Of a stretch of 64,000 nt of DNA, positions 24,182 through 41,881 are shown piece after piece. The translations under genes and the position numbers were made by a program. This DNA is from Obrimoposthia wandeli. Taxonomy: Eukaryota. Location: the NCBI GenBank assembly GCA_977020255.1, contig CDROCS010000253.1, positions 4,278,001 through 4,342,000 on the forward strand, read 5' to 3'. The stretch's first letter is position 1; the number at the start of each line of letters is the position of its first letter. The notes beneath the pieces are model-generated. The model did no database searches. It was not told the DNA's origin and saw only the letters and a program-made list of their open reading frames with translations.

Positions 24182-25138
24182 TCAAGAACAAGGTAAGTAG
24201 ATAATAAAAGTAGTGCCTTGTTTTTCCTTACTAGTGACTTTTATTTTACCCTCGTGTTTTTTAATAATGCCAAAGGAGACTGATAAGCCTAATCCTGTAC
24301 CAACACCTACCGGTTTAGTGGTAAAGAAAGGGTCGAATATTTTATTGATTATCGCCTGAGGTATACCGTCGCCATGATCGCTTATTTTAATAGTCAGGTA
24401 CTCCTTGCCCTCTTCCTGCTTAATTCCAGTAGATATATCTAAAACTCCTTTATTTTTTGTTGCATGAGCCGCGTTTATAAACATGTTTAATAAAACTTGG
24501 TTAATTTCGCCTGGATGGCAATAAATTTTAGGTAATTCGATTAAGTTTTTATTTACCGTTAAGCAATATTTCAGATCATTCCAGACAACTTTAAGAGACT
24601 CCTCAATAAGTTTATTAATATCGCAAAGCTCTTTTTCAAAAGAACCGGAATGACTTACCTTATTCAAATTGGTCACTATTTCTTTAACTCTATTTAGCCC
24701 TTTGTCTGTTTCAGCCAGCATCGGCTTTATATCACCATTAATATAATCAATGTCTTCTTGCTGTCTTAATTTTTGATAGGCTTTAGCAATGTCATGTGAT
24801 GCTAGCGAGGGCATAGTGGTGATCATAAAATCATCTAACCTTAATAAGGAGTCGACATACTCAGACAGCACAGTTAAGTTACTAATTGAGTAACCTATTG
24901 GATTATTAATTTCATGAGCAACGCCTGCAGCAAGCTGACCTATAGAGGCCATCTTTTCAGATTGTATTAGCTGATGCTGAGTAGATTTCAGTTCTTTTAC
25001 GGTCGATTCAAGTTTAATACAATTATCATAAAGACTACGCGTTTTGTTATCTAATAAATGTTCCGCAAGTAACCTCGCTTTTCGCTCTCGCTCATAAGCA
25101 ACTCTATAGGGGTCTGGCTTATTCATTATGACCTTCAA
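24182..25138 (-). CDS. Soluble histidine kinase paired with H-NOX (HnoK-like); likely start at 25126
   Basis: No TM; YERERKARLLAE..L..KTRSLY coiled coil; GQLAAGVAHEINNPIGY; PFFTTKPVGVGTGLGL; ATG overlaps the H-NOX stop. Confidence 0.88.
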   Translation of the reverse strand: MKVIMNKPDPYRVAYERERKARLLAEHLLDNKTRSLYDNCIKLESTVKELKSTQHQLIQSEKMASIGQLAAGVAHEINNPIGYSISNLTVLSEYVDSLLRLDDFMITTMPSLASHDIAKAYQKLRQQEDIDYINGDIKPMLAETDKGLNRVKEIVTNLNKVSHSGSFEKELCDINKLIEESLKVVWNDLKYCLTVNKNLIELPKIYCHPGEINQVLLNMFINAAHATKNKGVLDISTGIKQEEGKEYLTIKISDHGDGIPQAIINKIFDPFFTTKPVGVGTGLGLSVSFGIIKKHEGKIKVTSKEKQGTTFIIYLPCS

Positions 25139-25673
25139 AAGTTACCACTAATTTACACCGCGTAGCGTCATGATGCATACACTCAGGATGCTCGATTGAT
25201 ACTTTTTCATTGAATTGATCTGCGGCACCAAAAATTAAGCCAATACTCACATGGCATAACTTACGTTTAGAGCTGTAATACATAATAAGAGTGTTTTCAT
25301 CTACCGTTTCATATTCGAAAGTGGGTAAATAAGCATTGGGATGAAGGCGTTTTACTTCGACATGGATAAGGCCATCTATGGCAAGTAGAAAGCTTTGTAA
25401 GCTATCTATTGTGGAGATATCTATCGGGCTGGTATCGTATAATTTTTTAAATAAATATCGACCAAACTTTTCAATTAACGGTTCGATTTCAATGCCGGTT
25501 TTAACAGATAGTGCTTTGACCATGTTTATCAGTTCACTATCTTGGTATTGCTCTCCGCTGGTATATATTCCTTGTGATGGAGGGTCCGTTTGTTCAATTA
25601 ATTCATTCCACTGTTCCATTCCCATTTGTTCAATAATCATATCTGAAAATGCTGTATATATAGATCCTTGCAT
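25119..25673 (-). CDS. H-NOX heme-nitric oxide binding protein
   Basis: MQGSIY, YTSGEQYQDSE, proximal His IHVEVKRLHP, YSSKR (YxSxR), LCH..HPECMH..RC. Confidence 0.9.
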   Translation of the reverse strand: MQGSIYTAFSDMIIEQMGMEQWNELIEQTDPPSQGIYTSGEQYQDSELINMVKALSVKTGIEIEPLIEKFGRYLFKKLYDTSPIDISTIDSLQSFLLAIDGLIHVEVKRLHPNAYLPTFEYETVDENTLIMYYSSKRKLCHVSIGLIFGAADQFNEKVSIEHPECMHHDATRCKLVVTFEGHNE

Positions 25674-25901: not shown

Positions 25902-27263
25902 TAATGCCGATCAGTTAAGAAATTTATAACTTGATTAATTTGCTAATGAGATCAAAATCCAGTGATTGATATCACTGGATTTTTTTATGCAACTTTCTAC
26001 CGCTCTTTCTTTAGTTAATTCAAATAGTGTTACCGAGTTCCAAAATTTAGCAGACATTTTGTCCCCAGAAATAATTAGTGCGGGGCTAAAAGAGCACGGT
26101 ATATCTACCATTCGAAAACGCAAGCTGCCTATGGAAAATATGGTCTGGGCTGTCATTGGTATGGCGCTTTTTCGTAAATTTCCAATGCGCCAAATGCTTA
26201 ATCAACTTGATATTATTTTACCCAGTGGTATCCCCTATGTTGCATCAAGTGCGGTCACACAAGCGAGAAAAAAACTCGGTAGCAAAGTCATAGAAACTGT
26301 CTTTCAACAAACACAACAACAATGGAACCAAGATGCGCATCACAGTCAATGGTGTGGTTTGAACCTTTTAGGTGTTGATGGTGTTGTATGGCGGGCGCCA
26401 GATACAGATGAAAATAATCATGAGTTTGCGAAGACCGGGACGCAACATGGCAAGGCCAGTTACCCACAAGTTCGCATGGTATGTCAGATGGAACTAACGA
26501 GCCATTTATTAACGAATAGTGTCTTTGATAGCGTTGACGTTAACGAGATGAATCTTGCCTTAGGATTAATTGATAATACCCCAGATCACAGCCTAACATT
26601 ATTCGACAGAGGCTTTTATTCATTAGGTTTGTTGCATCGTTGGCAAACAACGGGTCGAGACATTGGTTAATGCCGCTTAAAAAGAACACTCAATATGAAG
26701 TGATTAGAAGTTTTGGACGACAAGATAAATTAATTCAATTAACGACGACACCGCAGTCACGAAAAAAGTTTCCAGAATTACCGAATGATGCAAATAATAA
26801 CGCAATGTCGATGACCCAATGCGTTTTCCGCCTGCTGATATAATCGATTTATATGTACATCGTTGGGAAATTGAACTTGGATTCAGAGAAATGAAACAAT
26901 CGTTATTAGACAACCGATTTACTTTACGAAGTAATCAGCCTGAACTCATTAGGCAAGAGTTATGGGGCATATTACTTGCGTATAATTTAATACGCTATCA
27001 GATGGTGCTAATGGCAACATCACTCGATGGCATTCATCCTAATCAATTAAGTTTTCATGGTGCATATTATTCATGAGTTAACCCAATTATCATTCTGTAC
27101 ACCAGGAAACATCCCCAAATACACGATGAATATAACAAAATCAGCTAAACAATTCGTATTACCCGGTAGACGAGAACGGCAATATCCGAGGGTGCTGAAG
27201 TGCTCAAAGAATAGGTACCCAGTTAAAAGTAAAAATGCCGTTCACCTTAAGTGAACGGCATTA
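25902..27263 (+). mobile_element. IS4-family insertion sequence, 1362 bp, with TIRs and 10-bp target duplication
   Basis: IRL TAATGCCGATCAGTTAAG, IRR CTTAAGTGAACGGCATTA (16/18); GCCACTGGCA at 25892-25901 and 27264-27273. Confidence 0.92.
25966..27254 (+). pseudogene. IS4 transposase broken into four ORF pieces
   Basis: [64 protein letters not shown] spread over different frames. Confidence 0.9.
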
Positions 27264-32932: not shown

Positions 32933-33757
32933 TTACTTTTCAACTGAGCTGGTTGGATAAGTAAATAATACCCGATACTTAGCTTTTAATCCTTGAGCGT
33001 TGAAAGCCGTTTTAAACAGGTAGATCCACTGGTGAAAACTAATATAGAACGGATTATTTGATTTGATTTGACCAATGATACCATAGCGGCAAGGACCATT
33101 TTTTTCAGGGTTTTCTTCGACATAAGTGCCAAAGATCTTATCCCAAACAATTAATACACCAGCAAAGTTTCTATCTAAGTAGGCTTTATTGGTTGAATGA
33201 TGCACTCGGTGATGTGAAGGCGTATTAAACACTTTTTCAAACCAACCCAGTTTATAAACAATTTGAGTATGAACAAAAAATTGATAAGCCAAATTAAGGG
33301 CAACCACAGTAAAAACGGTATTGGGGTCAAAACCGATAACTATCATTGGCATCCAAAAAATCCACATCCCCGCTAATGGGTACATCAACGATTGTCTAAA
33401 AGCGGTTGAGAAATTCATTTTGGTTGAACTATGATGGACAACATGGGCTGCCCACAACCAATGTATATGATGTGACGCTTTATGAAACCAATAGTAGAGA
33501 AAATCTTGTAATAAAAAAGCAATAAAAATAGTAATGAAACTGAGTGAGATATCAAACAGTGCAAACTGATGTAACCAATAAAAAAAGGGCATCAACAGTA
33601 ATAAAGTGATGGCATCAGATGTTTGATGTAAAAGTGCTAAGACGGTATTCGCCAAACTGTCTTTAATGTCGTAAAATTTACGATGTTTGACAAACTCATA
33701 AATAATAAAACCTAAAAACATTGGACTTAATGCCAATAAAATTACTTCAATATTCAT
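32933..33757 (-). CDS. Fatty-acid hydroxylase / sterol desaturase superfamily (alkylglycerol monooxygenase-like)
   Basis: His boxes YYWFHKASH, HVVHHS, FFVHT, TPSHHRVHH; NFAGVLIVWDKIFGT. Confidence 0.88.
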   Translation of the reverse strand: MNIEVILLALSPMFLGFIIYEFVKHRKFYDIKDSLANTVLALLHQTSDAITLLLLMPFFYWLHQFALFDISLSFITIFIAFLLQDFLYYWFHKASHHIHWLWAAHVVHHSSTKMNFSTAFRQSLMYPLAGMWIFWMPMIVIGFDPNTVFTVVALNLAYQFFVHTQIVYKLGWFEKVFNTPSHHRVHHSTNKAYLDRNFAGVLIVWDKIFGTYVEENPEKNGPCRYGIIGQIKSNNPFYISFHQWIYLFKTAFNAQGLKAKYRVLFTYPTSSVEK

Positions 33758-34260
33758 ATGCCGTTACCTGTTGAAGAATGCACTGCTGAAAAGTGCTGCG
33801 CTAATTTTTTCATCGCTTTAATAATATCGCGTTCAACAAAAAACTTTAACAAAAAGGCAGGTAACCATTTAGGGCCATTAAACTTAATAACGTAGTCTAG
33901 TTGTGTGGTTTTACTATTAGTCTCTAGTGATGTTACTCTAGGTACTACTTGGGGTGTTAAATGAATATCACCTTGGTGGTTTGATACTGGCCAGTTCCCC
34001 CTAATGCGATAGCAAATATGCGCATTACTTGCCTTAATGATCTCTTCTTCAAAAACTATTTTTCCGATTGAAATTTGACGAACAGCACCTTTACCGCCAA
34101 TTAATTCACCATCATTTTGCTTTTTTATTGTTTTAATTTTGGCATTAAAAAATCGTTCTAATTGTGGGTGGTCTAATAAAACTTGGCATACTTGCTCTAC
34201 TGGAGCTGATATTTTTTGGGTTACTTCAATGGTAATCATAAATCTCACCAAACAATTCAT
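33754..34260 (-). CDS. SRPBCC (START-like) family protein
   Basis: ISAPVEQV..L.DH, GKGAVRQI, FEEEII, SNHQGDI; ATGA overlap with the desaturase. Confidence 0.8.
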   Translation of the reverse strand: MNCLVRFMITIEVTQKISAPVEQVCQVLLDHPQLERFFNAKIKTIKKQNDGELIGGKGAVRQISIGKIVFEEEIIKASNAHICYRIRGNWPVSNHQGDIHLTPQVVPRVTSLETNSKTTQLDYVIKFNGPKWLPAFLLKFFVERDIIKAMKKLAQHFSAVHSSTGNGI

Positions 34261-34471: not shown

Positions 34472-37400
34472 TTACGCTACTTTGTCTAACACTGGTTTGT
34501 TATCCACAGTGGTTAGTTTGACCCACACCACCTTTTTAGTCGGTCGAGCAAAGTGACTAACAAAACCAAATAAGAAAATAACGAGTAACCAATATAGCGG
34601 TGTGTAATCTGTTTCTACGGGTTCAGATTTCGCCTGTTCTTCTAATTTTTGTCCTGAAATTTGTTCAGTTTGAGTAGACTGATTATTAGCTTTTTCGGTT
34701 GGTGGCATTTGTTGAGCTAAAGTCTTTGCTAATGCGTCAGCTAAGGCCTTAGCTAATGACTCAGACAAGGGCTTCATGCCAAAACCAACTGCGGTAACAT
34801 CCATGTATTCATTAAACTTACCATTGTCAGTGACAACATCAAATTCACTAGCAATATCAGTATAAGTTTCGACCATTTTTTTGATCGTTGCTTCATCTGC
34901 TTGCCAATAACCTTTACGCACAGCTTCGAGCATACGTTCAATAATTTGCGCTAAACTTTCAGCATTGTGTTCCTCAAAGAATTCACGCATATCCATTTGA
35001 TATTTATCATTAACATATACTTCAAAAAACTCCTGCCATTGATCGTCTCTTATTGCTTCTGGTGTCATCACTTCCCAGCCCCACATGTTATTCATGCGAT
35101 CTAAAATAGCGGTAGCACCCGCGTAACCTGAATCTTGCATGGCCTTTATCCAACGAGGGTGAAAGTAACGACTCCGCATTTCTTGATTAACAAACTCATC
35201 AAGTGTTTGCACTTTAACTTGGTCTTTTTTACGTAAATTAGACACGTACATTTCTGGCGTTTTACCATCTAAATGACGAACAGCTAAGCCAATACCACCA
35301 AAATATTGAAAAGGATCGTCATTGGTCATTAAGGCATAAAGATTGGTAGAACGAGAAAATATAACTCCATCCGTACCCGATAAAATTTTAGAATATAATC
35401 CTTGGCCATCACCTAAGACATCAGCAACATTTTCACTCCAACGTTTTTCATCACTACCATAGGCATAGCCCATTCTATCAAGGTAAAGGTTCGCCATCTT
35501 ATCATCCGTTTCCCAAGTATCTGAAGCGAGTGAGCTACCAGCTAAACCCGTACCATAATTACCAGTTTCATTTGAGAAAATACGAATTGATGATAAATAG
35601 TCCGCCTCTTTTTCGCTTTTACCTTTTACAAGTAGCTCAGATTTTAAAGCGCTAGCGTGGCGATAAACAAAGTTATTGTCTTCTTTTATTTTTGCCACTT
35701 TATCAATCGCTTTAGCAAGCCATAACATCACATTAGGAAAAGCGTCACGATACAAACCGGTTGCTGAAATAACAACATCAATACGTGGCCTTTTTAATTC
35801 ACTGTACGGAATAACTTCAGTATCAACGACTTGACCTTGTTTATTCCATTTAGGTTTTAAACCAAGCGCATGAAGAATTTGTGCTTCAAGGGCGCCTTGG
35901 TGCCGCATTGTTTCTAATGACCACAAGGAAAAAGCCAACTTTTCAGGAAATTTCTCGTGCTTTGCTACGTAAGCATCGATGGTTTGATTCATCAGGGTAA
36001 CGCCAGCGTCATAGGCCTCTTTTGATGGCACTTTCGCCGGATTAAAACCAATAAGATTTCTTCCCGTTGGTACGGCATCAGGATTTCTAATCGGATCGCC
36101 GCCATAACTAGTCGCGATGTAATTAGCTTCCAGTGCTGACAGCAAGTTTTGTGTTTCAGCAATGGCTTTAAAGTTATTCCAGTAGGTTTTAGCTAGGGAT
36201 AAATCAGTCATTAACTGCTCATCTACATCCGATAATAGTTCTGATTCAGGTGCAGTAAAATAAGTCTCAAGTAGTTGAAAGCCATCAAGTGCTTTAAGCT
36301 TTCGTACATTACGTTTATCAAATTGTTCAGCTTCTGCTACCGCAAGGTCATGGGATTTTTCATACATTGCTGCACGTTGAGTAAAATCGTCCCCCAGCAT
36401 TTGCAGCATGGTGCTATATAAATGTGCTTGTACCGGCAAATCACCGAAAATATGTACGCCTAAAGGTTGGCTCATTTGTGCAAGAGCATGTAAATGATCT
36501 TGAATCTTACTCAGGTATTGCTCAAAATTAGCTTCAATTTCTGATCGCTCAAGTGATAAGTCATTAAGCATATTAAGTTGCTCAGCTAAATTAACAATTT
36601 CTGCTTGCGTATTGGCACGGGTTTGTCCTTGTGACAACATCAGGTAGTTCGTTATTTTATCATTTAAGGTCGCGATATCACTGTATAAACCCGCCTTGGC
36701 AAAACCTGGGGTTAAGTGACTTATCATGGTGGCACGACCACGTCGTTTCGCTTGCATTGCCTCACCAACGTTATCAATAATGTAAGGATAAAAAACGGGT
36801 AGATTGCCCAAAGCTAAACTGGGTGCATCATACACAGATAAGCCTCGCTCTTTACCCGTTAGCCACTCTTGTGAGCCATGTGTACCTAAATGGATATACG
36901 CATCTGCCTCAAACGTTTCGCGGGCAAATAAATAGATAGCTAAATAGCTGTGATTTATCGGTGTTTTCGTGCTGTGATATAAATTAGCATGCTCTTTAGC
37001 ATCTTCACCGCGTACTCCTTGTGGCATAACAATCATATTACCAAGGTTCATTCTTGGAATAACAAACGCTGCTATGGTTTCTCCGTCTATTTTAGCTTGG
37101 CGTAACATGCCACTGTCTTCAGGCTTTCCCCAACGCTCAACAATTGGTTTTGTTACTGATTCTGGCAGTGCATTAAACCAATGCAAGTAAGTACTTAATG
37201 GCATATATTCCGCTAAGTCTTGCGCAATTAATTGCTCAGTATCTTCACCACGATAATAAGGTCGTAGTATTTTTCCTGCTGATTCGATGATTTCTTTATG
37301 ACCTTTAACGTCAACTTGATAACCTTTTTCTTTCATGGCGTTAGCGATATTTTCGATTGACGTAGGTACGTCTAAAAAGGCCGCGCCTATGTTCTTCTCA

Positions 37401-38566
37401 CCGGGAGGGTAATTCCAAATAAAAGTGGCGACTTTTTTATCACTATTGTTGATATGTGCAAGGTTTGCATGATTGTACGCACGTTCTACCAAGGCATTAA
37501 GCTGATAGGCAATGGGCTTTTTTACCCCTTTGTCATTCGCTGCAATGATGGTTGGGTCAGTACTACCAGTATCTTCAGGCATGACTAAAAAAAAGGGGGT
37601 TAACGACGGTGGAACACCGGCATTATCTTGCTCAAAACTTGTTTGGTCGCCTTCGGTATAATTAAGCGCATGAATAATGGGTACACCAATCTTGGCAAAC
37701 TCATTGCGACGTTTATCTACAAAGTGAAGTGAACGATAATTAATGAGTAAATCAACTCTAGATTTTTCACCTTGTCCGGTATCCGCCATTAATAAGTCGG
37801 TGTAATTTACCGCTTGATCTTCACCTTCAAAAAAATATGCCAACGCTTTAGCGCCTTTTTCCTCAAGACCTTTAATAATGGCATCAACAATTTGTTGCTG
37901 TTCATAATCAACCACGCTTCGGTGAATACCAATAGCAATAACCGGTTGATTTTTTGCTACGTTAAGAAAGTTAAAAAATACTTGCTCATCTGCGGTCACT
38001 TGGCCGGGAAAATCATAATGGTATAAACCAACACTGGGTATAACTTCAGGCTCTTTCGCTGTAGCTGTCGTTAATTTTAAAAAATCACTAGCAAGAAAAA
38101 CCATCATATTTTGATAGTTACCTCGGCCGGCATTATTATAATAACCACCAATACTTTTGGCTTGCTCACTTGATAAGCCCTGATTCATTTTTACATTGCT
38201 TAAGTCACCCAATGAAATAACAGGTACTGAGGCGAAGTTCGTTACGTGGTCTTGATATTTAGCAAACATATATTTTGATAAGGCTGGGTTAATACCATCA
38301 AGCATGATCAAACTCGCAGTAGACCAAGCCGTTTTAATTTCATCGTCAGTCTTGCCTTTGGTTGAAAAGTTGACCAATGAAAACGGTTGATCTTTTGCCA
38401 GTAATATTAGTAAATCACCTTTAGGTTTTGAGGCATGTGACGACATCATCAACAATATTTGTGGTTTTTCTTCTGCGGCAATACTTATATTGGACACACA
38501 TAGAGTAGCCATAACCATGAGCATAACCTTAAGAAAAGATAGCTGCTGTAATATTTTTTTTATCAT
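34472..38566 (-). CDS. Exported, membrane-anchored CobN/Mg-chelatase-H family protein (HmuS/BtuS-like)
   Basis: WNYPPGEKN, HLGTHGSQEW, GGDPIRNPDAVPTGRN, RPRIDVVISATGLYRDAFPN, EMRSRYFHPRWI; N-terminal signal peptide; C-terminal TM YWLLVIFLFGFV. Confidence 0.88.
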   Translation of the reverse strand: MIKKILQQLSFLKVMLMVMATLCVSNISIAAEEKPQILLMMSSHASKPKGDLLILLAKDQPFSLVNFSTKGKTDDEIKTAWSTASLIMLDGINPALSKYMFAKYQDHVTNFASVPVISLGDLSNVKMNQGLSSEQAKSIGGYYNNAGRGNYQNMMVFLASDFLKLTTATAKEPEVIPSVGLYHYDFPGQVTADEQVFFNFLNVAKNQPVIAIGIHRSVVDYEQQQIVDAIIKGLEEKGAKALAYFFEGEDQAVNYTDLLMADTGQGEKSRVDLLINYRSLHFVDKRRNEFAKIGVPIIHALNYTEGDQTSFEQDNAGVPPSLTPFFLVMPEDTGSTDPTIIAANDKGVKKPIAYQLNALVERAYNHANLAHINNSDKKVATFIWNYPPGEKNIGAAFLDVPTSIENIANAMKEKGYQVDVKGHKEIIESAGKILRPYYRGEDTEQLIAQDLAEYMPLSTYLHWFNALPESVTKPIVERWGKPEDSGMLRQAKIDGETIAAFVIPRMNLGNMIVMPQGVRGEDAKEHANLYHSTKTPINHSYLAIYLFARETFEADAYIHLGTHGSQEWLTGKERGLSVYDAPSLALGNLPVFYPYIIDNVGEAMQAKRRGRATMISHLTPGFAKAGLYSDIATLNDKITNYLMLSQGQTRANTQAEIVNLAEQLNMLNDLSLERSEIEANFEQYLSKIQDHLHALAQMSQPLGVHIFGDLPVQAHLYSTMLQMLGDDFTQRAAMYEKSHDLAVAEAEQFDKRNVRKLKALDGFQLLETYFTAPESELLSDVDEQLMTDLSLAKTYWNNFKAIAETQNLLSALEANYIATSYGGDPIRNPDAVPTGRNLIGFNPAKVPSKEAYDAGVTLMNQTIDAYVAKHEKFPEKLAFSLWSLETMRHQGALEAQILHALGLKPKWNKQGQVVDTEVIPYSELKRPRIDVVISATGLYRDAFPNVMLWLAKAIDKVAKIKEDNNFVYRHASALKSELLVKGKSEKEADYLSSIRIFSNETGNYGTGLAGSSLASDTWETDDKMANLYLDRMGYAYGSDEKRWSENVADVLGDGQGLYSKILSGTDGVIFSRSTNLYALMTNDDPFQYFGGIGLAVRHLDGKTPEMYVSNLRKKDQVKVQTLDEFVNQEMRSRYFHPRWIKAMQDSGYAGATAILDRMNNMWGWEVMTPEAIRDDQWQEFFEVYVNDKYQMDMREFFEEHNAESLAQIIERMLEAVRKGYWQADEATIKKMVETYTDIASEFDVVTDNGKFNEYMDVTAVGFGMKPLSESLAKALADALAKTLAQQMPPTEKANNQSTQTEQISGQKLEEQAKSEPVETDYTPLYWLLVIFLFGFVSHFARPTKKVVWVKLTTVDNKPVLDKVA

Positions 38567-38575
38567 GATTTTAAC

Positions 38576-38914
38576 CTATTTACCCTTAACATCTGTTTGG
38601 TCTTCACCCTGCTCAGGCACATAAACAAAACTACCATCAGCCATTTTATATGCCACGCCAGCACGCATACCTTCTCCAGAGCCAACCTCACCTGTAGACT
38701 TGTACTGTTTGATTTCTTTTCCTTTTTTAACAATAACTTCCATATTCGGTTTACCCGCATTTTTTATCACTGTGACATCATCACTGGAAAAGGTACTCAA
38801 TGGATTTTGCGCTAAGGCGATTAATAACGCGGCAATAATAACTAAGAAAACATCGACCAAGTTAACAGCGCTCACAATGGGGTTTAACTCTTCATCTTCA
38901 TCAAGAAAACGCAT
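38576..38914 (-). CDS. DUF2149-family protein
   Basis: NPIVSAVNLVDVFLV, KNAGKPNMEVIVKKG, GVAYKMADGSFVYVPE. Confidence 0.85.
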   Translation of the reverse strand: MRFLDEDEELNPIVSAVNLVDVFLVIIAALLIALAQNPLSTFSSDDVTVIKNAGKPNMEVIVKKGKEIKQYKSTGEVGSGEGMRAGVAYKMADGSFVYVPEQGEDQTDVKGK

Positions 38915-39453
38915 TATGCTTGACCATTTATTTTACGGATATTTATCAGCTCTACCGCGCACCAACGTTTTTTTACTGATGCAGGCCAAAACGTTATCGA
39001 TGAAATAACTAAGCCCCAAATAACGGCAGCAAAAGCAATAATCAGATTTTCACTAATGCCTTGAATATTACCGTCAGCCAGTGCTTGTAAAGCAGGTCCC
39101 ATAGGTATCATGGTTGCTATCAAACCAAGCATGGGTGCTATACGTGTCACTATGCGTAAGTTTTCTAATTGCTTTAACGCAACCACTTCTAACTCATCAT
39201 TGCTGGCGGTAGGGTTTTGAATAAAATAATTATGAATTGGGTAACCATTGTGCGTGGTTATTTTTTCACTGTTTGCCGTCGTTATTTGACGGGTATAAGT
39301 AAGTTGGTTTTGTTTACGTACTAGGTACTGAGAAAAAAAGCGTCCCAAGGCATAAATGGCATAAACCACTAACCCACAAATTAAAACAATAATTGGCGCC
39401 ATCAACAGTTTTGATGCCTGCGCCATGGTTACTTCTAAAAATTGAATATTCAC
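38914..39453 (-). CDS. MotA/TolQ/ExbB proton-channel family protein
   Basis: TRIAPMLGLIATMIPMGPAL..L..GN...LIIAF; coupled to DUF2149. Confidence 0.88.
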   Translation of the reverse strand: MNIQFLEVTMAQASKLLMAPIIVLICGLVVYAIYALGRFFSQYLVRKQNQLTYTRQITTANSEKITTHNGYPIHNYFIQNPTASNDELEVVALKQLENLRIVTRIAPMLGLIATMIPMGPALQALADGNIQGISENLIIAFAAVIWGLVISSITFWPASVKKRWCAVELINIRKINGQA

Positions 39454-39513
39454 TGTGCTAATTTCCTCTTTAAATTAAACAACAGAATTGTACATTCTCC
39501 TTAAAACCATTAC

Positions 39514-39534
39514 AAATACTAATTATTCTCATTT
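39514..39534. promoter_or_regulatory. Fur box in the divergent promoter
   Basis: Minus strand AAATGAGAATAATTAGTATTT, close to the AAATGATAATNATTATCATTT consensus. Confidence 0.7.
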
Positions 39535-39697
39535 AGATTTACATTTTAATTTATGTTCTGTATGGTAAAAAAGAAACCAACCAAAGGTGTTTATTTTTTA
39601 TACTAAACAACTAAGCACTTAATTAGAAACGGCTTTTATTAAAAGCAAATATTTACTTGGTACCTTGGCGTATCACTCTTTTTTATAGGAATTAAAA

Positions 39698-41881
39698 ATG
39701 TTTATGTACAAGCGCGCTCTCCTCGCTAGCGCCATTTCAACTGCCCTTTTGATTGCACCGTCTAGTCACGGTGAAGATAATCTTGATGACACAGTGAACA
39801 CTGACTTTGAAGTGATTGTCATTAGTGGCACTAAGACTGAAAAGCCTTTAAAAGATGTTGCGGGCAGCATCTCGGTAATCACGGAACAAGATATTGAAAA
39901 GCAATTAGTAACAGATATGAGCCAGTTATTTAAATATGATCCGAGTGTACAAGTAAGCGGTAACACTGGCGGCGCGCAAAATATTATTGTTCGCGGTATG
40001 GGCGGTGATCGTGTGCTGATGATCAAAGACGGCATGCGCATGAACGAAGGTTATGGCGCTAATGGTTTAAATGACATTGTTGGCCGTGGTTTTATTGAAA
40101 CAGACACATTAAAACAAGTTGAAGTCGCTAAAGGTGCATCCTCTTCACTTTATGGCTCAGATGCCTTAGGTGGCATTATTGTATTTACTACAAAAAATGC
40201 TTCAGACTACTTATTAGACGGTGAAACTTTTGCAGGTAATGTTAAGTTAGGTTATACCGACGACGGCAAACAAAGCAATGTTGGCACTACTTTAGCTCTA
40301 GCCACGAGTAACTTCGAGCAGTTACTCAACTTGAACTACCGTGATGGTGAAGAACAGCAAAACTATGCCAGCACTAAACCTGCTCTTGCCATTGAGTCGA
40401 CCAGTATTTTTTATAAAGCAAACTACAATTTCAATGAAGATAGCTACCTTAGTTTTACTACTGACATCTGGAGTCAAGATGTTAGCGGTGATAGCGCCTA
40501 TGGCCTGTTAGATTATTTTAGAAAGCTCGATGGCTACAAAATATTAACTGAAAGTAGCCAGGGTGAAAAAGATAATAAGGCATTCCAATTACGCTTTCAT
40601 AGTGAATCAAAAACAGCATTGTACGACCTACTCAATGTATCACTTTATGCCAATAGTACTGAGCAAGAAGATATTGAATATGGTCAGTTAGACATTAATG
40701 CCAACTTCGGTTACCCCGTTATTGAAATTCGCGATATGTCGAAAACAGCTGTTTATAAACAAGATACACAAGGGTTTTTATCAAACGCCAGTTTAGTGCT
40801 TAATGACAACCACACTATTGGTTATGGTGTAGATATTGAAAAATCAGAATCTAGTCGCACAGAAATAAAGCTTTATTCCGTTGAAGGTACGCCTAAAAAA
40901 GGCTATCCACAGGCAAGTAAAAAGTTCCCGAAAACAGACGTTTTTCGCGCGGGAGTTTTTATCAATGATGAAATTTCGTTATTAAATGACACATTAATAA
41001 TTACCCCAGGAGCGCGTTTTGATATTTATGAAATGCAAGCAAATGGCGCAACCAAAGAAAGTGGTGACCCGTACCAATCGTTTGATGAAGAGCATGTTTC
41101 ATTAAATATCGGCGCGTTATATAAATTTACCGAAACCATTGCTGGTTTTGCTCAATATGGTCAGGGCTTTAAAGTGCCCGCTTATGATTTAGCCTACATT
41201 GAGCATGATAACTCGTTATATGGTTATAAAATTGTACCCAGTGATGACTTAGCACCAGAAGAAAGTGATAGTTTTGAAATTGGCTTACGTGGTCATAGCG
41301 GTGACTTTTTCTTTTCAACGGCCATTTATTACAACACGTTTGATAATTTTTTAGCAACTGAACTCATTGATATTGAAACAATAGTTAATCGCTATACAGG
41401 CGAAGATGCACAGGTATTAGTATACCAATATCAAAATATCGAGTCGGTTACCTTAAAAGGTATTGAAGCAGCCGTTCGTTATCATCTCAATGATAATTTT
41501 TCTGTGTTTGCCAATGCGGCCTATCAAGACGGTGAAAATGATGAAACGGGTGATTACTTAAGCAGTATTTCGCCACTGTCTGGCATTACAGGGGTTAGCT
41601 ACGAAGCAGATACACTTTCAGCTGAGTTAATTGTTAACTGGGCTGATCGCATGGACAAAGTAAATGAAGGTAAAGCTGAAATAGCCGGTTACGGTACTGT
41701 CGACTTTTTAGCAAGCTACCAGGTTAACGATGAGTTAAAGGTTAATCTAGCACTGAGTAACTTAACCGACAAAGAGTATGTTAACTATATTAATGGCGCA
41801 GGACACAAAGAGAAATCTACCCTAGCGAATGTTACCGAAGCAGGTAGAGGATTTTCAGTATCAATGCGTTATGACTTTTAA
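39698..41881 (+). CDS. TonB-dependent receptor, heme/hemoprotein type
   Basis: Signal peptide, TonB box EVIVISG, VEVAKGASSSLYGSDALGG, FKVP..H..DLAPE (FRAP/His/NPNL-like), terminal RYDF. Confidence 0.85.
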   Translation: MFMYKRALLASAISTALLIAPSSHGEDNLDDTVNTDFEVIVISGTKTEKPLKDVAGSISVITEQDIEKQLVTDMSQLFKYDPSVQVSGNTGGAQNIIVRGMGGDRVLMIKDGMRMNEGYGANGLNDIVGRGFIETDTLKQVEVAKGASSSLYGSDALGGIIVFTTKNASDYLLDGETFAGNVKLGYTDDGKQSNVGTTLALATSNFEQLLNLNYRDGEEQQNYASTKPALAIESTSIFYKANYNFNEDSYLSFTTDIWSQDVSGDSAYGLLDYFRKLDGYKILTESSQGEKDNKAFQLRFHSESKTALYDLLNVSLYANSTEQEDIEYGQLDINANFGYPVIEIRDMSKTAVYKQDTQGFLSNASLVLNDNHTIGYGVDIEKSESSRTEIKLYSVEGTPKKGYPQASKKFPKTDVFRAGVFINDEISLLNDTLIITPGARFDIYEMQANGATKESGDPYQSFDEEHVSLNIGALYKFTETIAGFAQYGQGFKVPAYDLAYIEHDNSLYGYKIVPSDDLAPEESDSFEIGLRGHSGDFFFSTAIYYNTFDNFLATELIDIETIVNRYTGEDAQVLVYQYQNIESVTLKGIEAAVRYHLNDNFSVFANAAYQDGENDETGDYLSSISPLSGITGVSYEADTLSAELIVNWADRMDKVNEGKAEIAGYGTVDFLASYQVNDELKVNLALSNLTDKEYVNYINGAGHKEKSTLANVTEAGRGFSVSMRYDF

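What the first reader, a model, noticed from the sequence alone, without database searches (positions are those of the whole stretch)
34472..41881. Hmu-like heme-iron dechelatase locus in a marine gammaproteobacterium
Seen: MotA-like, DUF2149 and a 1364-aa CobN-family gene, divergent from a heme-type TonB receptor and sharing a Fur box. The CobN-like protein has a signal peptide and a C-terminal TM anchor. No cobS/cobT, B12 synthesis genes or recognisable cobalamin riboswitch are nearby. Established: Bacteroidetes hmu operons combine a receptor, CobN-like HmuS, a MotA-like protein and DUF2149, and HmuS has been reported to remove iron from heme. Inference: oxygen-independent, proton-motive-force-linked metal extraction from tetrapyrroles (heme, possibly chlorophyll or corrinoid derivatives) in the periplasm. 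It would probably be mis-annotated as cobaltochelatase.
Basis: partly seen in the sequence, partly recalled or inferred. Interest (0 to 1): 0.75.

Follow-up and report, generated by a model that had tools for sequence, protein, structure and literature searches.

The report
Iron-regulated heme iron-extraction gene module
A cold-marine Colwellia-like bacterium carries a four-gene, apparently iron-repressed module (heme receptor, small proton-channel pair, exported CobN-like enzyme) that most likely strips iron out of heme between its two membranes, using a cousin of the gut-bacterial enzyme HmuS that databases label as a vitamin B12 enzyme.

Summary
At 34472-41881 lie a 1364-aa exported CobN-family protein, a DUF2149 protein and a MotA/ExbB-like protein on the minus strand. 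A heme-type TonB receptor is transcribed divergently, and a Fur box sits in the shared intergenic region. There are no B12 genes or riboswitch nearby.

The module is conserved in about 42 genomes of marine Gamma- and Betaproteobacteria, with the Fur box at a fixed position. The enzyme, MotA-like and DUF2149 proteins are homologs of Bacteroides HmuS, HmuU and HmuV.

It is not a member of the HmuS family as published:
- It forms a separate proteobacterial clade.
- It lacks HmuY, HmuT, the Met-rich insert and the Met-79/His-254 heme ligands.
- His-1209/Glu-1212 are replaced by Asp/Gln, as in true CobN.

In 88 further loci, this Asp/Gln class recurs with heme receptors, hemP and Fur boxes. A His/Glu sister class carries Zur-like boxes and CirA-like receptors, like the zinc-regulated P. 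aeruginosa PA1922-25 operon, whose class I could not check.

Most likely function: Fur-repressed periplasmic removal of iron from heme. Chemistry and proton-motive-force coupling are inferred, not shown. Verdict: a new variant of a known kind.

The parts
34472..38566 (-). Exported CobN/HmuS-like protein, 1364 aa, the putative periplasmic heme dechelatase
   Evidence: Pfam PF02514 E=0. Best solved relative is the HmuS heme dechelatase 9d26, E 7e-126, ahead of CobN 7c6o (3e-105) and ChlH 4zhj (3e-97). It sits in a proteobacterial clade of exported proteins, apart from CobN/BchH.
38477..38566 (-). N-terminal signal-like segment (residues 1-30, KK, hydrophobic core, ..SIA|AE)
   Evidence: Translation and hydropathy. 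The feature is shared by the whole exported clade and absent from true CobN/BchH.
36875..36892 (-). HLGTHG motif (residues 559-564). His-563 is the equivalent of HmuS His-538, the residue shown to be essential for heme-to-PPIX turnover
   Evidence: Alignment columns; role of His-538 from PMC12583661.
35294..35326 (-). TNDDPFQYFGG (residues 1081-1091), in place of the HmuS LSLDHxxEFMGG motif. Asp-1084 stands for His-1209 and Gln-1087 for Glu-1212
   Evidence: HMMER alignment to 9d26 and alignment columns. True Ralstonia CobN reads SDDYLQYHGG in the same columns.
34637..34657 (-). Conserved juxtamembrane motif SGQKLEE (residues 1304-1310)
   Evidence: A G-Q/M-x-L-E motif lies about 15-25 residues before the C-terminal helix in both the proteobacterial and the Bacteroides HmuS clades.
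34550..34597 (-). C-terminal hydrophobic helix (residues 1324-1339) followed by RPTKK, a putative inner-membrane anchor
   Evidence: Hydropathy. A C-terminal helix is also reported for HmuS in PMC13227078.
38576..38914 (-). DUF2149 protein, 112 aa (HmuV homolog): one TM helix with an invariant Asp-21 (VNLVDVFLV), then a beta-rich periplasmic part
   Evidence: Pfam PF09919 E 1.3e-29. 40% identical to B. finegoldii HmuV. 73-95% identical across orthologs while the enzyme is 57-81%. AF2 model has a TM helix plus five strands, pLDDT 69.
38914..39453 (-). MotA/ExbB/TolQ-family proton-channel protein, 179 aa, GTG start (HmuU homolog)
   Evidence: Pfam PF01618 32.6 bits. 27% identical to B. finegoldii HmuU, E 4e-21.
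39515..39533 (.). Fur box AATACTAATTATTCTCATT in the divergent promoter region
   Evidence: 15 of 18 matches to AATGATAATNATTATCATT, the best match in the window. It is conserved at about 72 to 159 nt (mostly 80 to 105) upstream of the MotA-like start in 42 loci. It overlaps or abuts promoter-like hexamers on both strands. No Zur-like box is present.
39698..41881 (+). TonB-dependent heme/hemoglobin-type outer-membrane receptor, 727 aa
   Evidence: TIGR01785 and TIGR01786 above cutoffs. Best PDB relative is PhuR, E 3e-60. Degenerate FRAP/NPNL region FKVP...H...SDDLAPE at residues 491-523.

Best explanation
This is a Fur-repressed heme-iron acquisition module.

Proposed sequence of events:
1. 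Under iron limitation Fur leaves the box at 39515-39533 and both divergent transcription units are expressed.
2. The PhuR-like receptor imports heme into the periplasm.
3. The 1364-aa CobN/HmuS-like protein is exported by its signal peptide and held on the inner membrane by its C-terminal helix. It binds heme in the central cleft and removes the iron without opening the ring. The conserved His-563/Glu dyad is on one side of the cleft and an Asp-1083/Asp-1084/Gln-1087 set on the other. The products are protoporphyrin IX and Fe(II), and the iron is taken up by a ferrous transporter encoded elsewhere.
4. The MotA/ExbB-like and DUF2149 proteins form an inner-membrane proton channel that belongs to the enzyme rather than to the receptor. 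They probably supply the work that an AAA+ ATPase supplies to cytoplasmic CobN/ChlH.

Shown: gene content, homology, export signals by hydropathy, conserved synteny, the conserved Fur box, and the association with heme genes.

Inferred: the reaction itself, its direction, its products, the reductant, and the role of the proton channel.
For: 1. Homology to every core Hmu component, and the closest solved structure is the HmuS dechelatase.
2. The receptor is a bona fide heme type.
3. The Fur box is conserved in position in 42 genomes from Colwellia to Thauera, and no Zur box is present.
4. The four-gene unit is conserved while its flanks differ.
5. Distant Asp/Gln-class relatives (44-73% identity to the search query P0125, itself 45% to the window's enzyme, mostly under 52%) recur with heme genes. 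L059 has hemP, FecCD/ABC, two ABM proteins and ChuX_HutX/HemS. L060 has hemP. hemP occurs in 11 of 45 dereplicated Asp/Gln loci against 0 of 16 His/Glu loci. Receptors were closer to the heme type in 15 of 31, and all five tested pass the TIGR01785/01786 cutoffs. Fur boxes reach 17 of 18.
6. The catalytic His (HmuS His-538), Glu-577, Ser-1014 and Asp-1208 equivalents are kept.
7. MotA-like plus DUF2149 accompany the enzyme in 60 of 64 loci with enough flank. This includes 18 with no receptor nearby, and two where a complete TonB-ExbB-ExbD set is also adjacent.
8. No ATPase partner, cob genes or riboswitch are present.
Against: - No experiment exists on any proteobacterial member.
- The residues that define the HmuS family are not conserved: His-1209, Glu-1212, Met-79, His-254 and the Met-rich insert. 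The second-site residues are those of true CobN.
- HmuY and HmuT are absent.
- The one studied proteobacterial operon of this build, P. aeruginosa PA1922-25, responds to zinc and its function is undetermined.
- The Fur box is a consensus match in AT-rich DNA.
- No reductant partner, ferrous transporter or porphyrin handling gene is in the window.
- The DUF2149-ExbD likeness is not statistically supported.
- No RNA data were available.
Confidence: 0.6

Rival explanations
1. The enzyme works on a different metal complex: a corrinoid (cobalt salvage), a zinc, nickel or copper tetrapyrrole, or another imported chelate. Heme would not be its substrate.
For: - The Asp/Asp/Gln second-site residues are those of true CobN.
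- A HupE/UreJ Ni/Co-type transporter gene follows the enzyme gene in L054/L132.
- His/Glu-class relatives carry Zur-like boxes, and PA1922-25 is in the Zur regulon.
- PCuAC/SCO1 genes lie next to two of the relatives.
Against: - In this clade the regulator box is Fur, not Zur.
- The receptor is the heme type.
- There is no cobalamin riboswitch.
- It is the Asp/Gln class that co-occurs with hemP, heme receptors and ChuX/HemS genes.
- Asp/Gln appears to be the ancestral state of the exported clade, not a cobalt-specific mark.
Confidence: 0.13
2. The CobN-like protein is a non-catalytic periplasmic heme-binding or hand-over protein. MotA-like/DUF2149 would simply be a private energiser for the receptor, an ExbBD substitute. 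Iron would be released later by a cytoplasmic heme oxygenase.
For: - No TonB, ExbB or ExbD genes are in the window.
- The literature on Bacteroides assigns HmuU/HmuV to powering HmuR.
- The HmuS-specific ligand residues are missing.
- L059 also carries ABM (IsdG-like) and HemS-type genes.
Against: - A 1364-aa chelatase body with the catalytic His/Glu dyad invariant in every aligned relative is hard to explain for a mere carrier.
- MotA-like/DUF2149 stay with the enzyme in 18 loci with no receptor nearby, and beside full TonB-ExbB-ExbD sets.
- No TonB-like partner is in the module.
- No inner-membrane heme ABC transporter is in the window.
Confidence: 0.17
3. The enzyme runs in the chelatase direction in the periplasm, inserting a metal into an imported or exported tetrapyrrole.
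For: All characterised relatives except HmuS are chelatases. The active-site second site resembles CobN.
Against: Fur repression and a heme import receptor fit acquisition of iron, not its expenditure. No tetrapyrrole biosynthesis or export genes are nearby. The nearest characterised homolog works as a dechelatase.
Confidence: 0.05

Closest known systems
Bacteroidota hmuYRSTUV operon with the HmuS heme dechelatase (B. thetaiotaomicron structure 9D26; PMC12583661, PMC13227078, PMC6460266)
   Same: It shares a receptor, an exported membrane-anchored CobN-like enzyme, a MotA/ExbB-like protein and a DUF2149 protein. It has N-terminal and C-terminal hydrophobic segments. The catalytic His-538/Glu-577 equivalents are kept. 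There is no AAA+ partner. The juxtamembrane G-Q/M-x-L-E motif is shared.
   Different: - It forms a separate clade.
- Asp/Gln replace His-1209/Glu-1212.
- There are no Met-79/His-254 ligands and no Met-rich insert.
- There is no HmuY hemophore and no HmuT.
- Gene order is U-V-S, with the receptor divergent.
- The receptor is a proteobacterial PhuR-like heme type.
- A gammaproteobacterial-type Fur box is present.
- The host is a facultatively aerobic marine heterotroph, not a heme-auxotrophic anaerobe.
Pseudomonas aeruginosa PA1922-PA1925 (TonB receptor 'CirA', CobN-like, MotA/ExbB-like, DUF2149)
   Same: It has the same four protein families in one operon in a gammaproteobacterium. It is also annotated as cobaltochelatase, and its function is still open.
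   Different: It is Zur-regulated and induced more than 100-fold by zinc limitation. Its receptor is CirA-like and its order is R-S-U-V. The environmental loci of that build that I could read have His/Glu, Zur-like boxes and CirA-like receptors. The PA1923 sequence itself was not available to me.
Class I chelatases CobNST and ChlHID/BchHID
   Same: The catalytic subunit has the same fold family (Pfam PF02514). The second-site residues Asp-Asp..Gln are as in Ralstonia CobN.
   Different: Those enzymes are cytoplasmic, lack signal and anchor, need AAA+ partners, and sit among cob or bch genes. The window's protein lies outside that group with 99% SH-aLRT support.
Classical proteobacterial heme uptake (PhuR/HemR receptor, HemTUV ABC transporter, HemS/ChuX, heme oxygenase, HemP)
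   Same: It has a heme-type receptor under Fur control. Related Asp/Gln modules are embedded in or next to such clusters.
   Different: In the window there is no periplasmic binding protein, ABC transporter, HemS or oxygenase. An exported chelatase-fold enzyme and a proton-channel pair take their place.

Membership tests
HmuS heme dechelatase family (as defined by Nath et al. 2025, PMC12583661) | HFG(T/A)HG motif with catalytic His-538 | tested here: met
   The window's protein has HLGTHG with His-563. The position is His in every row of the five aligned groups shown.
HmuS heme dechelatase family (as defined by Nath et al. 2025, PMC12583661) | LSLDHxxEFMGG motif with His-1209 and Glu-1212 | tested here: not met
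   The motif reads TNDDPFQYFGG, so His becomes Asp-1084 and Glu becomes Gln-1087. This holds for all members of the window's clade.
HmuS heme dechelatase family (as defined by Nath et al. 2025, PMC12583661) | Site-1 heme ligands Met-79 and His-254 | tested here: not met
   The Met-79 column is Asn-93. The His-254 column is a gap (INYR against INMAHGRM). The alignment of this N-terminal part is less certain than that of the body.
HmuS heme dechelatase family (as defined by Nath et al. 2025, PMC12583661) | Methionine-rich insertion in domain IV | tested here: not met
   Outside the signal peptide, no 60-residue stretch was found as methionine-rich as that of the HmuS proteins, which have 7-10 Met per 60 residues.
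HmuS heme dechelatase family (as defined by Nath et al. 2025, PMC12583661) | Placement inside the HmuS clade | tested here: not met
   The window's protein is in a 23-row proteobacterial clade (100). HmuS is in a separate 11-row clade (96). Their mutual relation is unresolved, and both are apart from CobN/BchH (99).
HmuS heme dechelatase family (as defined by Nath et al. 2025, PMC12583661) | Export with N- and C-terminal membrane segments; periplasmic exposure | tested here: met
   Shown by hydropathy only. The N-terminal signal-like segment and the C-terminal helix are shared with Bacteroides HmuS (PMC13227078).
HmuS heme dechelatase family (as defined by Nath et al. 2025, PMC12583661) | Complete hmuYRSTUV operon | tested here: not met
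   Equivalents of R, S, U and V are present. No HmuY or HmuT homolog is in the window by tblastn.
HmuS heme dechelatase family (as defined by Nath et al. 2025, PMC12583661) | Conversion of heme to PPIX and Fe(II) | not testable with these tools
   This needs biochemistry or genetics.
CobN subunit of aerobic cobaltochelatase | Passes the curated CobN equivalog models | tested here: not met
   TIGR02257 scores 525 against a cutoff of 822. NF004644 scores 1247.3 against a cutoff of 1248 over residues 14-1337, just under. That model's alignment includes the N- and C-terminal parts that true CobN lacks.
CobN subunit of aerobic cobaltochelatase | Cytoplasmic, with CobS/CobT partners and cob genes or a B12 riboswitch | tested here: not met
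   A signal peptide and a C-terminal anchor are present. No such genes lie within about 15 kb. There is no Rfam hit. It lies outside the CobN group in the trees.
TonB-dependent heme/hemoglobin receptors (TIGR01785/TIGR01786) | Score above the curated cutoffs; Plug plus barrel | tested here: met
   348.4 against 316.85 and 367.5 against 323.75. PhuR is the best PDB match. The FRAP/NPNL boxes are only degenerate.
Fur regulon | Fur box overlapping the promoter, conserved in orthologs | tested here: met
   Binding and regulation themselves are not testable here.
ExbB-ExbD / TolQ-TolR / MotA-MotB proton-channel pairs | MotA/ExbB-family subunit plus a single-pass partner with a TM aspartate | tested here: inconclusive
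   - The MotA_ExbB Pfam hit is above cutoff.
- DUF2149 has one TM helix with an invariant Asp in VN-x-I/V-D-V/I/L-F-L-V, in register with ExbD P-L-I-D-V. However, hhalign probability is only 13%.
- The AF2 models have pLDDT 61-69 and no fold match reaches Z 3.

The most novel reading that the evidence does not exclude
The conserved trio of exported CobN-like enzyme, MotA/ExbB-like protein and DUF2149 would be a proton-motive-force-driven (de)chelatase. In it a small proton-channel stator replaces the AAA+ ATPase motor of cytoplasmic class I chelatases and acts on the enzyme through its C-terminal anchor and the G-Q-x-L-E motif.

Within Proteobacteria a coupled active-site switch would split this machine into two classes:
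- Asp/Gln: Fur- and heme-linked, as in this locus.
- His/Glu: Zur-linked, probably the class of P. aeruginosa PA1922-25.

That would make metal extraction from imported chelates a general, regulator-tuned strategy far beyond gut Bacteroidota.
Probability: 0.3. Interest if true: 0.85.

Novelty: new variant of a known kind. Interest (0 to 1): 0.62.

Why it matters
Ring-preserving removal of iron from heme was shown only in 2025, for HmuS of anaerobic gut Bacteroidota. The papers I read treat the system as characteristic of that phylum.

Here the same core machine appears under a conserved Fur box with a classical heme receptor in dozens of marine and environmental Gamma- and Betaproteobacteria, including Colwellia, Thalassotalea, Pseudoalteromonas, Shewanella, Thauera and Nitrosomonas. 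All of these genes are named 'cobaltochelatase CobN'.

If the function holds:
- It adds a route for heme-iron recycling in iron-poor seawater and sea ice.
- It corrects a systematic mis-annotation that inflates apparent B12-synthesis capacity in marine genomes.
- It supplies genetically tractable, aerobically growing hosts for studying the enzyme and its unexplained MotA/DUF2149 partners.
- It gives a testable lead on the long-unexplained zinc-regulated PA1922-25 operon of P. aeruginosa.

Tried and rejected
- **Zur box in the window's intergenic region:** best 13 of 23, no better than background. Rejected.
- **Cobalamin riboswitch or any Rfam family:** none in the window.
- **cob, AAA+ chelatase, heme ABC, TonB/ExbBD or hemP genes in the window:** none.
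- **Asp-for-His as a sign of cobalt or corrinoid specificity:** rejected as decisive. Asp/Gln looks ancestral in the exported clade, and it is the class tied to heme genes.
- **A TonB/TolA-like S-H-L-S motif in the enzyme's C-terminal helix:** the window has 'SH' but it is not conserved.
- **DUF2149 as an ExbD homolog:**
  - hhalign probability was 13%, TM region only.
  - A relaxed Pfam scan gave nothing.
  - A profile search of PDB gave only a weak ComEA SLBB-like hit, E 0.42.
  - Two AF2 models had pLDDT 60.7 and 69.2.
  - A wide structural search had best Z 2.9, driven by the helix.
  - No fold assignment resulted.
- **Expression data:** no RNA run holds the stretch. The holders are ice, seawater and plankton metagenomes kept as contigs.
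- **Representative search with the full protein:** Residues 140-1250 were used instead.
- **Failed look-ups:** P0132 had no contig on record. One tree run timed out in MAFFT and was repeated with a faster alignment.
- **Literature:** searches found no description of a Fur/heme-type proteobacterial module. That covers only the open-access library searched.
- **PA1923 sequence:** I could not obtain it, so its residue class is a prediction.

Full report
**What is there**

On the minus strand are a 179-aa MotA/ExbB-family protein (38914-39453), a 112-aa DUF2149 protein (38576-38914) and a 1364-aa CobN/Mg-chelatase-family protein (34472-38566). The first two overlap by one base and the last two are nine bases apart, so they form one operon. 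On the plus strand, 244 nt away, is a 727-aa TonB-dependent receptor (39698-41881). Pfam assigns all four.

The receptor exceeds the curated cutoffs of both heme receptor subfamilies. Its best solved relative over its full length is the P. aeruginosa heme receptor PhuR, E 3e-60.

The big protein starts with a signal-like segment (KK, hydrophobic core..SIA|AE). It ends with a hydrophobic helix followed by RPTKK. By hydropathy, true cytoplasmic CobN and BchH lack both features, while Bacteroides HmuS has both.

Composition and best hits place the organism in Colwelliaceae, about 80% identity to Colwellia proteins. The DNA recurs in sea-ice, seawater and plankton metagenomes.

**Regulation**

The intergenic region contains AATACTAATTATTCTCATT at 39515-39533. 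It matches the palindromic gammaproteobacterial Fur consensus at 15 of 18 positions and is the best match in the whole 64-kb window. No Zur-like site is present.

I fetched 47 related genomic loci. In 42 of them the same divergent arrangement is kept. A Fur-like box lies at about 72 to 159 nt (mostly 80 to 105) upstream of the MotA-like start. The mean is 15.2 of 18 against 11.2 in shuffles, and two boxes are perfect. The box overlaps or abuts promoter-like hexamers of both strands, although those hexamer hits alone are no more frequent than chance.

This is a phylogenetic footprint, not a binding experiment. No RNA data exist for this DNA.

**Not B12**

Within about 15 kb on each side there are no cob genes, no CobS/CobT or ChlI/ChlD-type ATPases and no heme ABC transporter. 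The neighbours are housekeeping genes: purU, thyA, lgt, fumarase, serine dehydratase and the like. No Rfam family reaches threshold in the window.

Every named relative is annotated 'cobaltochelatase subunit CobN'. NCBIfam model NF004644 scores 1247.3 against a cutoff of 1248 across residues 14-1337.

**Relation to Hmu**

An annotated Bacteroides finegoldii record shows the canonical hmuY-R-S-T-U-V operon: HmuY, receptor, 'CobN', a membrane protein, MotA/ExbB and DUF2149. BLASTP against the window's proteins gives:

| Bacteroides protein | Identity | E-value | Note |
|---|---|---|---|
| HmuS | 35% | 4e-92 | C-terminal half |
| HmuU | 27% | 4e-21 | |
| HmuV | 40% | 8e-20 | |
| HmuR | 34% | 3e-19 | plug region only |

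HmuY and HmuT have no counterpart in the window. The closest solved structure to the big protein is the HmuS dechelatase 9d26 (E 7e-126), ahead of CobN (3e-105) and ChlH (3e-97). HmuS was shown to convert heme to protoporphyrin IX and Fe(II), with His-538 essential (PMC12583661).

**Membership fails on the family's own signatures**

[quoted passage not shown] In the window's protein:
- The His-538 motif is kept (HLGTHG, His-563), as are Glu-577, Ser-1014 and Asp-1208.
- The second motif reads TNDDPFQYFGG, with Asp-1084 for His-1209 and Gln-1087 for Glu-1212.
- Gln-1198, Ser-1199 and Trp-1202 become Ser, Thr and Tyr.
- The Met-79 column is Asn and the His-254 column is a gap.
- There is no Met-rich insert.

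True Ralstonia CobN, encoded among cobalamin genes, has the same Asp-Asp..Gln pattern. BchH has Asp-His..Asp.

**Phylogeny**

A full-library search with residues 140-1250 found 4158 relatives. An HmuS-type representative appears only near rank 140.

I built trees with bona fide CobN and BchH as outgroups. In them:
- All exported proteins fall on one side, with 99% support.
- The window's protein lies in a proteobacterial clade with 100% support.
- HmuS lies in another clade with 96% support.
- The relation between those two clades is unresolved.
- Asp/Gln is found in the basal groups and in CobN. His/Glu has arisen several times.

The locus is therefore a sister-level relative of HmuS, not a member of the family.

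**Which metal?**

P. aeruginosa PA1922-25 has the same four families, but it belongs to the Zur regulon and its role is undetermined. I therefore surveyed relatives.

Eight loci came from exact look-ups and 80 from a metagenome scan. Each was scored for the active-site pair, the neighbouring receptor, Fur and Zur consensus matches upstream, and heme-related neighbours.

Results after dereplication at 80% identity:

| Feature | Asp/Gln loci | His/Glu loci | Fisher p |
|---|---|---|---|
| Zur-like core, 10 or more of 12, upstream of the receptor | 0 of 26 | 4 of 5 | 1.6e-4 |
| Fur match, 14 or more of 18 | 10 of 26 | 0 of 5 | 0.15 |
| hemP within 4.5 kb | 11 of 45 | 0 of 16 | 0.052 |
| Receptor closer to the window's heme type than to CirA | 15 of 31 | 0 of 5 | not computed |

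Further points:
- All five heme-type receptors that I sent to NCBIfam pass both heme cutoffs.
- The receptors of L053 to L056 do not pass and look CirA-like.
- One Asp/Gln locus, L059, lies inside a classical heme cluster with hemP, FecCD/ABC, two ABM proteins and ChuX_HutX/HemS.
- On a tree, heme receptors and hemP are scattered over most Asp/Gln subclades. The sampled His/Glu loci form one clade.

The residue-regulator link therefore rests on few evolutionary events and should be read as a lead. For the present locus the outcome is clear enough: its class is the one tied to iron and heme.

**The proton-channel pair**

MotA-like and DUF2149 genes flank the enzyme gene in 60 of 64 loci with enough sequence on both sides. 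This includes 18 where no receptor is within 2.5 kb. It also includes two where a full TonB-ExbB-ExbD set sits alongside. The conserved core is therefore enzyme plus pair, not receptor plus pair.

DUF2149 is the most conserved protein of the module, 73-95% identical where the enzyme is 57-81%. It has a single TM helix with an invariant Asp, in register with the ExbD TM motif. Statistical support for homology is lacking, and its beta-rich periplasmic part found no fold match.

Cytoplasmic class I chelatases depend on an AAA+ motor, and the periplasm has no ATP. A proton-driven substitute acting on the enzyme is therefore an attractive idea, but it is untested.

**Verdict**

The best explanation, at about 0.6, is a Fur-repressed periplasmic heme-iron extraction module built around an HmuS-related enzyme with a different second-site chemistry. 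The rivals, listed separately, are another metal chelate as substrate, a non-catalytic carrier role with the pair merely energising the receptor, and chelatase direction.

I re-derived the shared points independently. I added the failed HmuS signature tests, the clade placement, the core-trio argument and the Fur/heme against Zur class split.

I found no published description of the proteobacterial Fur/heme variant in the searchable library.

Noticed in passing
L055:3485-3507, L056:3930-3952, L123, L135 (upstream of the receptor genes); compare window 39515-39533: Proteobacterial modules whose enzyme has His/Glu at the HmuS 1209/1212 columns carry Zur-like palindromes (for example GGAATGTTATGTTATAACATTTT, 20 of 23) and CirA-like receptors. 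Asp/Gln modules carry Fur boxes, hemP and often heme receptors. The His/Glu loci sampled form one clade, so few independent events underlie the link.
   Followed up: partly
window 34637-34657 and the C-termini of relatives (P0121-P0268, L048 HmuS): A short motif G-Q/M-x-L-E lies about 15-25 residues before the C-terminal membrane helix. It is conserved across proteobacterial and Bacteroides exported CobN-like proteins. It may be a contact site for the MotA/DUF2149 pair.
   Followed up: no
window 38576-38914 and L001-L046: DUF2149 is far more conserved than its partners (73-95% identity against 57-81% for the enzyme and 47-83% for the receptor). It has an invariant TM aspartate. A PDB profile search gave only a weak hit to the ComEA SLBB-type domain (E 0.42) around the ..DG..VYVPE end.
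   Followed up: partly
L054:11170-11769 (same in L132): A HupE/UreJ-family metal transporter gene directly follows the CobN-like gene. A complete TonB-ExbD-ExbD-ExbB set is divergent from the same module.
   Followed up: no
L056:3173-3667; L058:13058-13927: Copper-chaperone-type genes (PCuAC/LpqE-like, SCO1/SenC) lie beside two His/Glu-class modules. In L057 a cytochrome c plus COX1-like pair follows the module.
   Followed up: no
L059:9117-9569: A cupredoxin-domain gene is inserted between the CobN-like and MotA-like genes of a module embedded in a heme-utilisation cluster. It could be an electron donor for heme reduction.
   Followed up: no
window 34472-38566; NCBIfam NF004644: The NCBIfam 'CobN equivalog' model NF004644 aligns to residues 14-1337, including the signal and anchor regions, at 1247.3 bits against a cutoff of 1248. 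That model therefore seems to describe the exported family rather than true CobN. This may be a source of the systematic 'cobaltochelatase' naming.
   Followed up: partly
window 24182-25673 and 25966-26670: An H-NOX (heme-NO-binding) protein gene lies next to a histidine kinase gene. Beside them is a truncated IS4-family transposase ORF (N-terminal domain plus half of the DDE domain).
   Followed up: no
window 32933-34260; L032, L035, L036, L042: An SRPBCC/polyketide-cyclase-like gene and a fatty-acid-hydroxylase-family gene follow the module in Colwellia relatives only. A promoter-like site at 34300-34272 suggests a separate transcription unit.
   Followed up: partly
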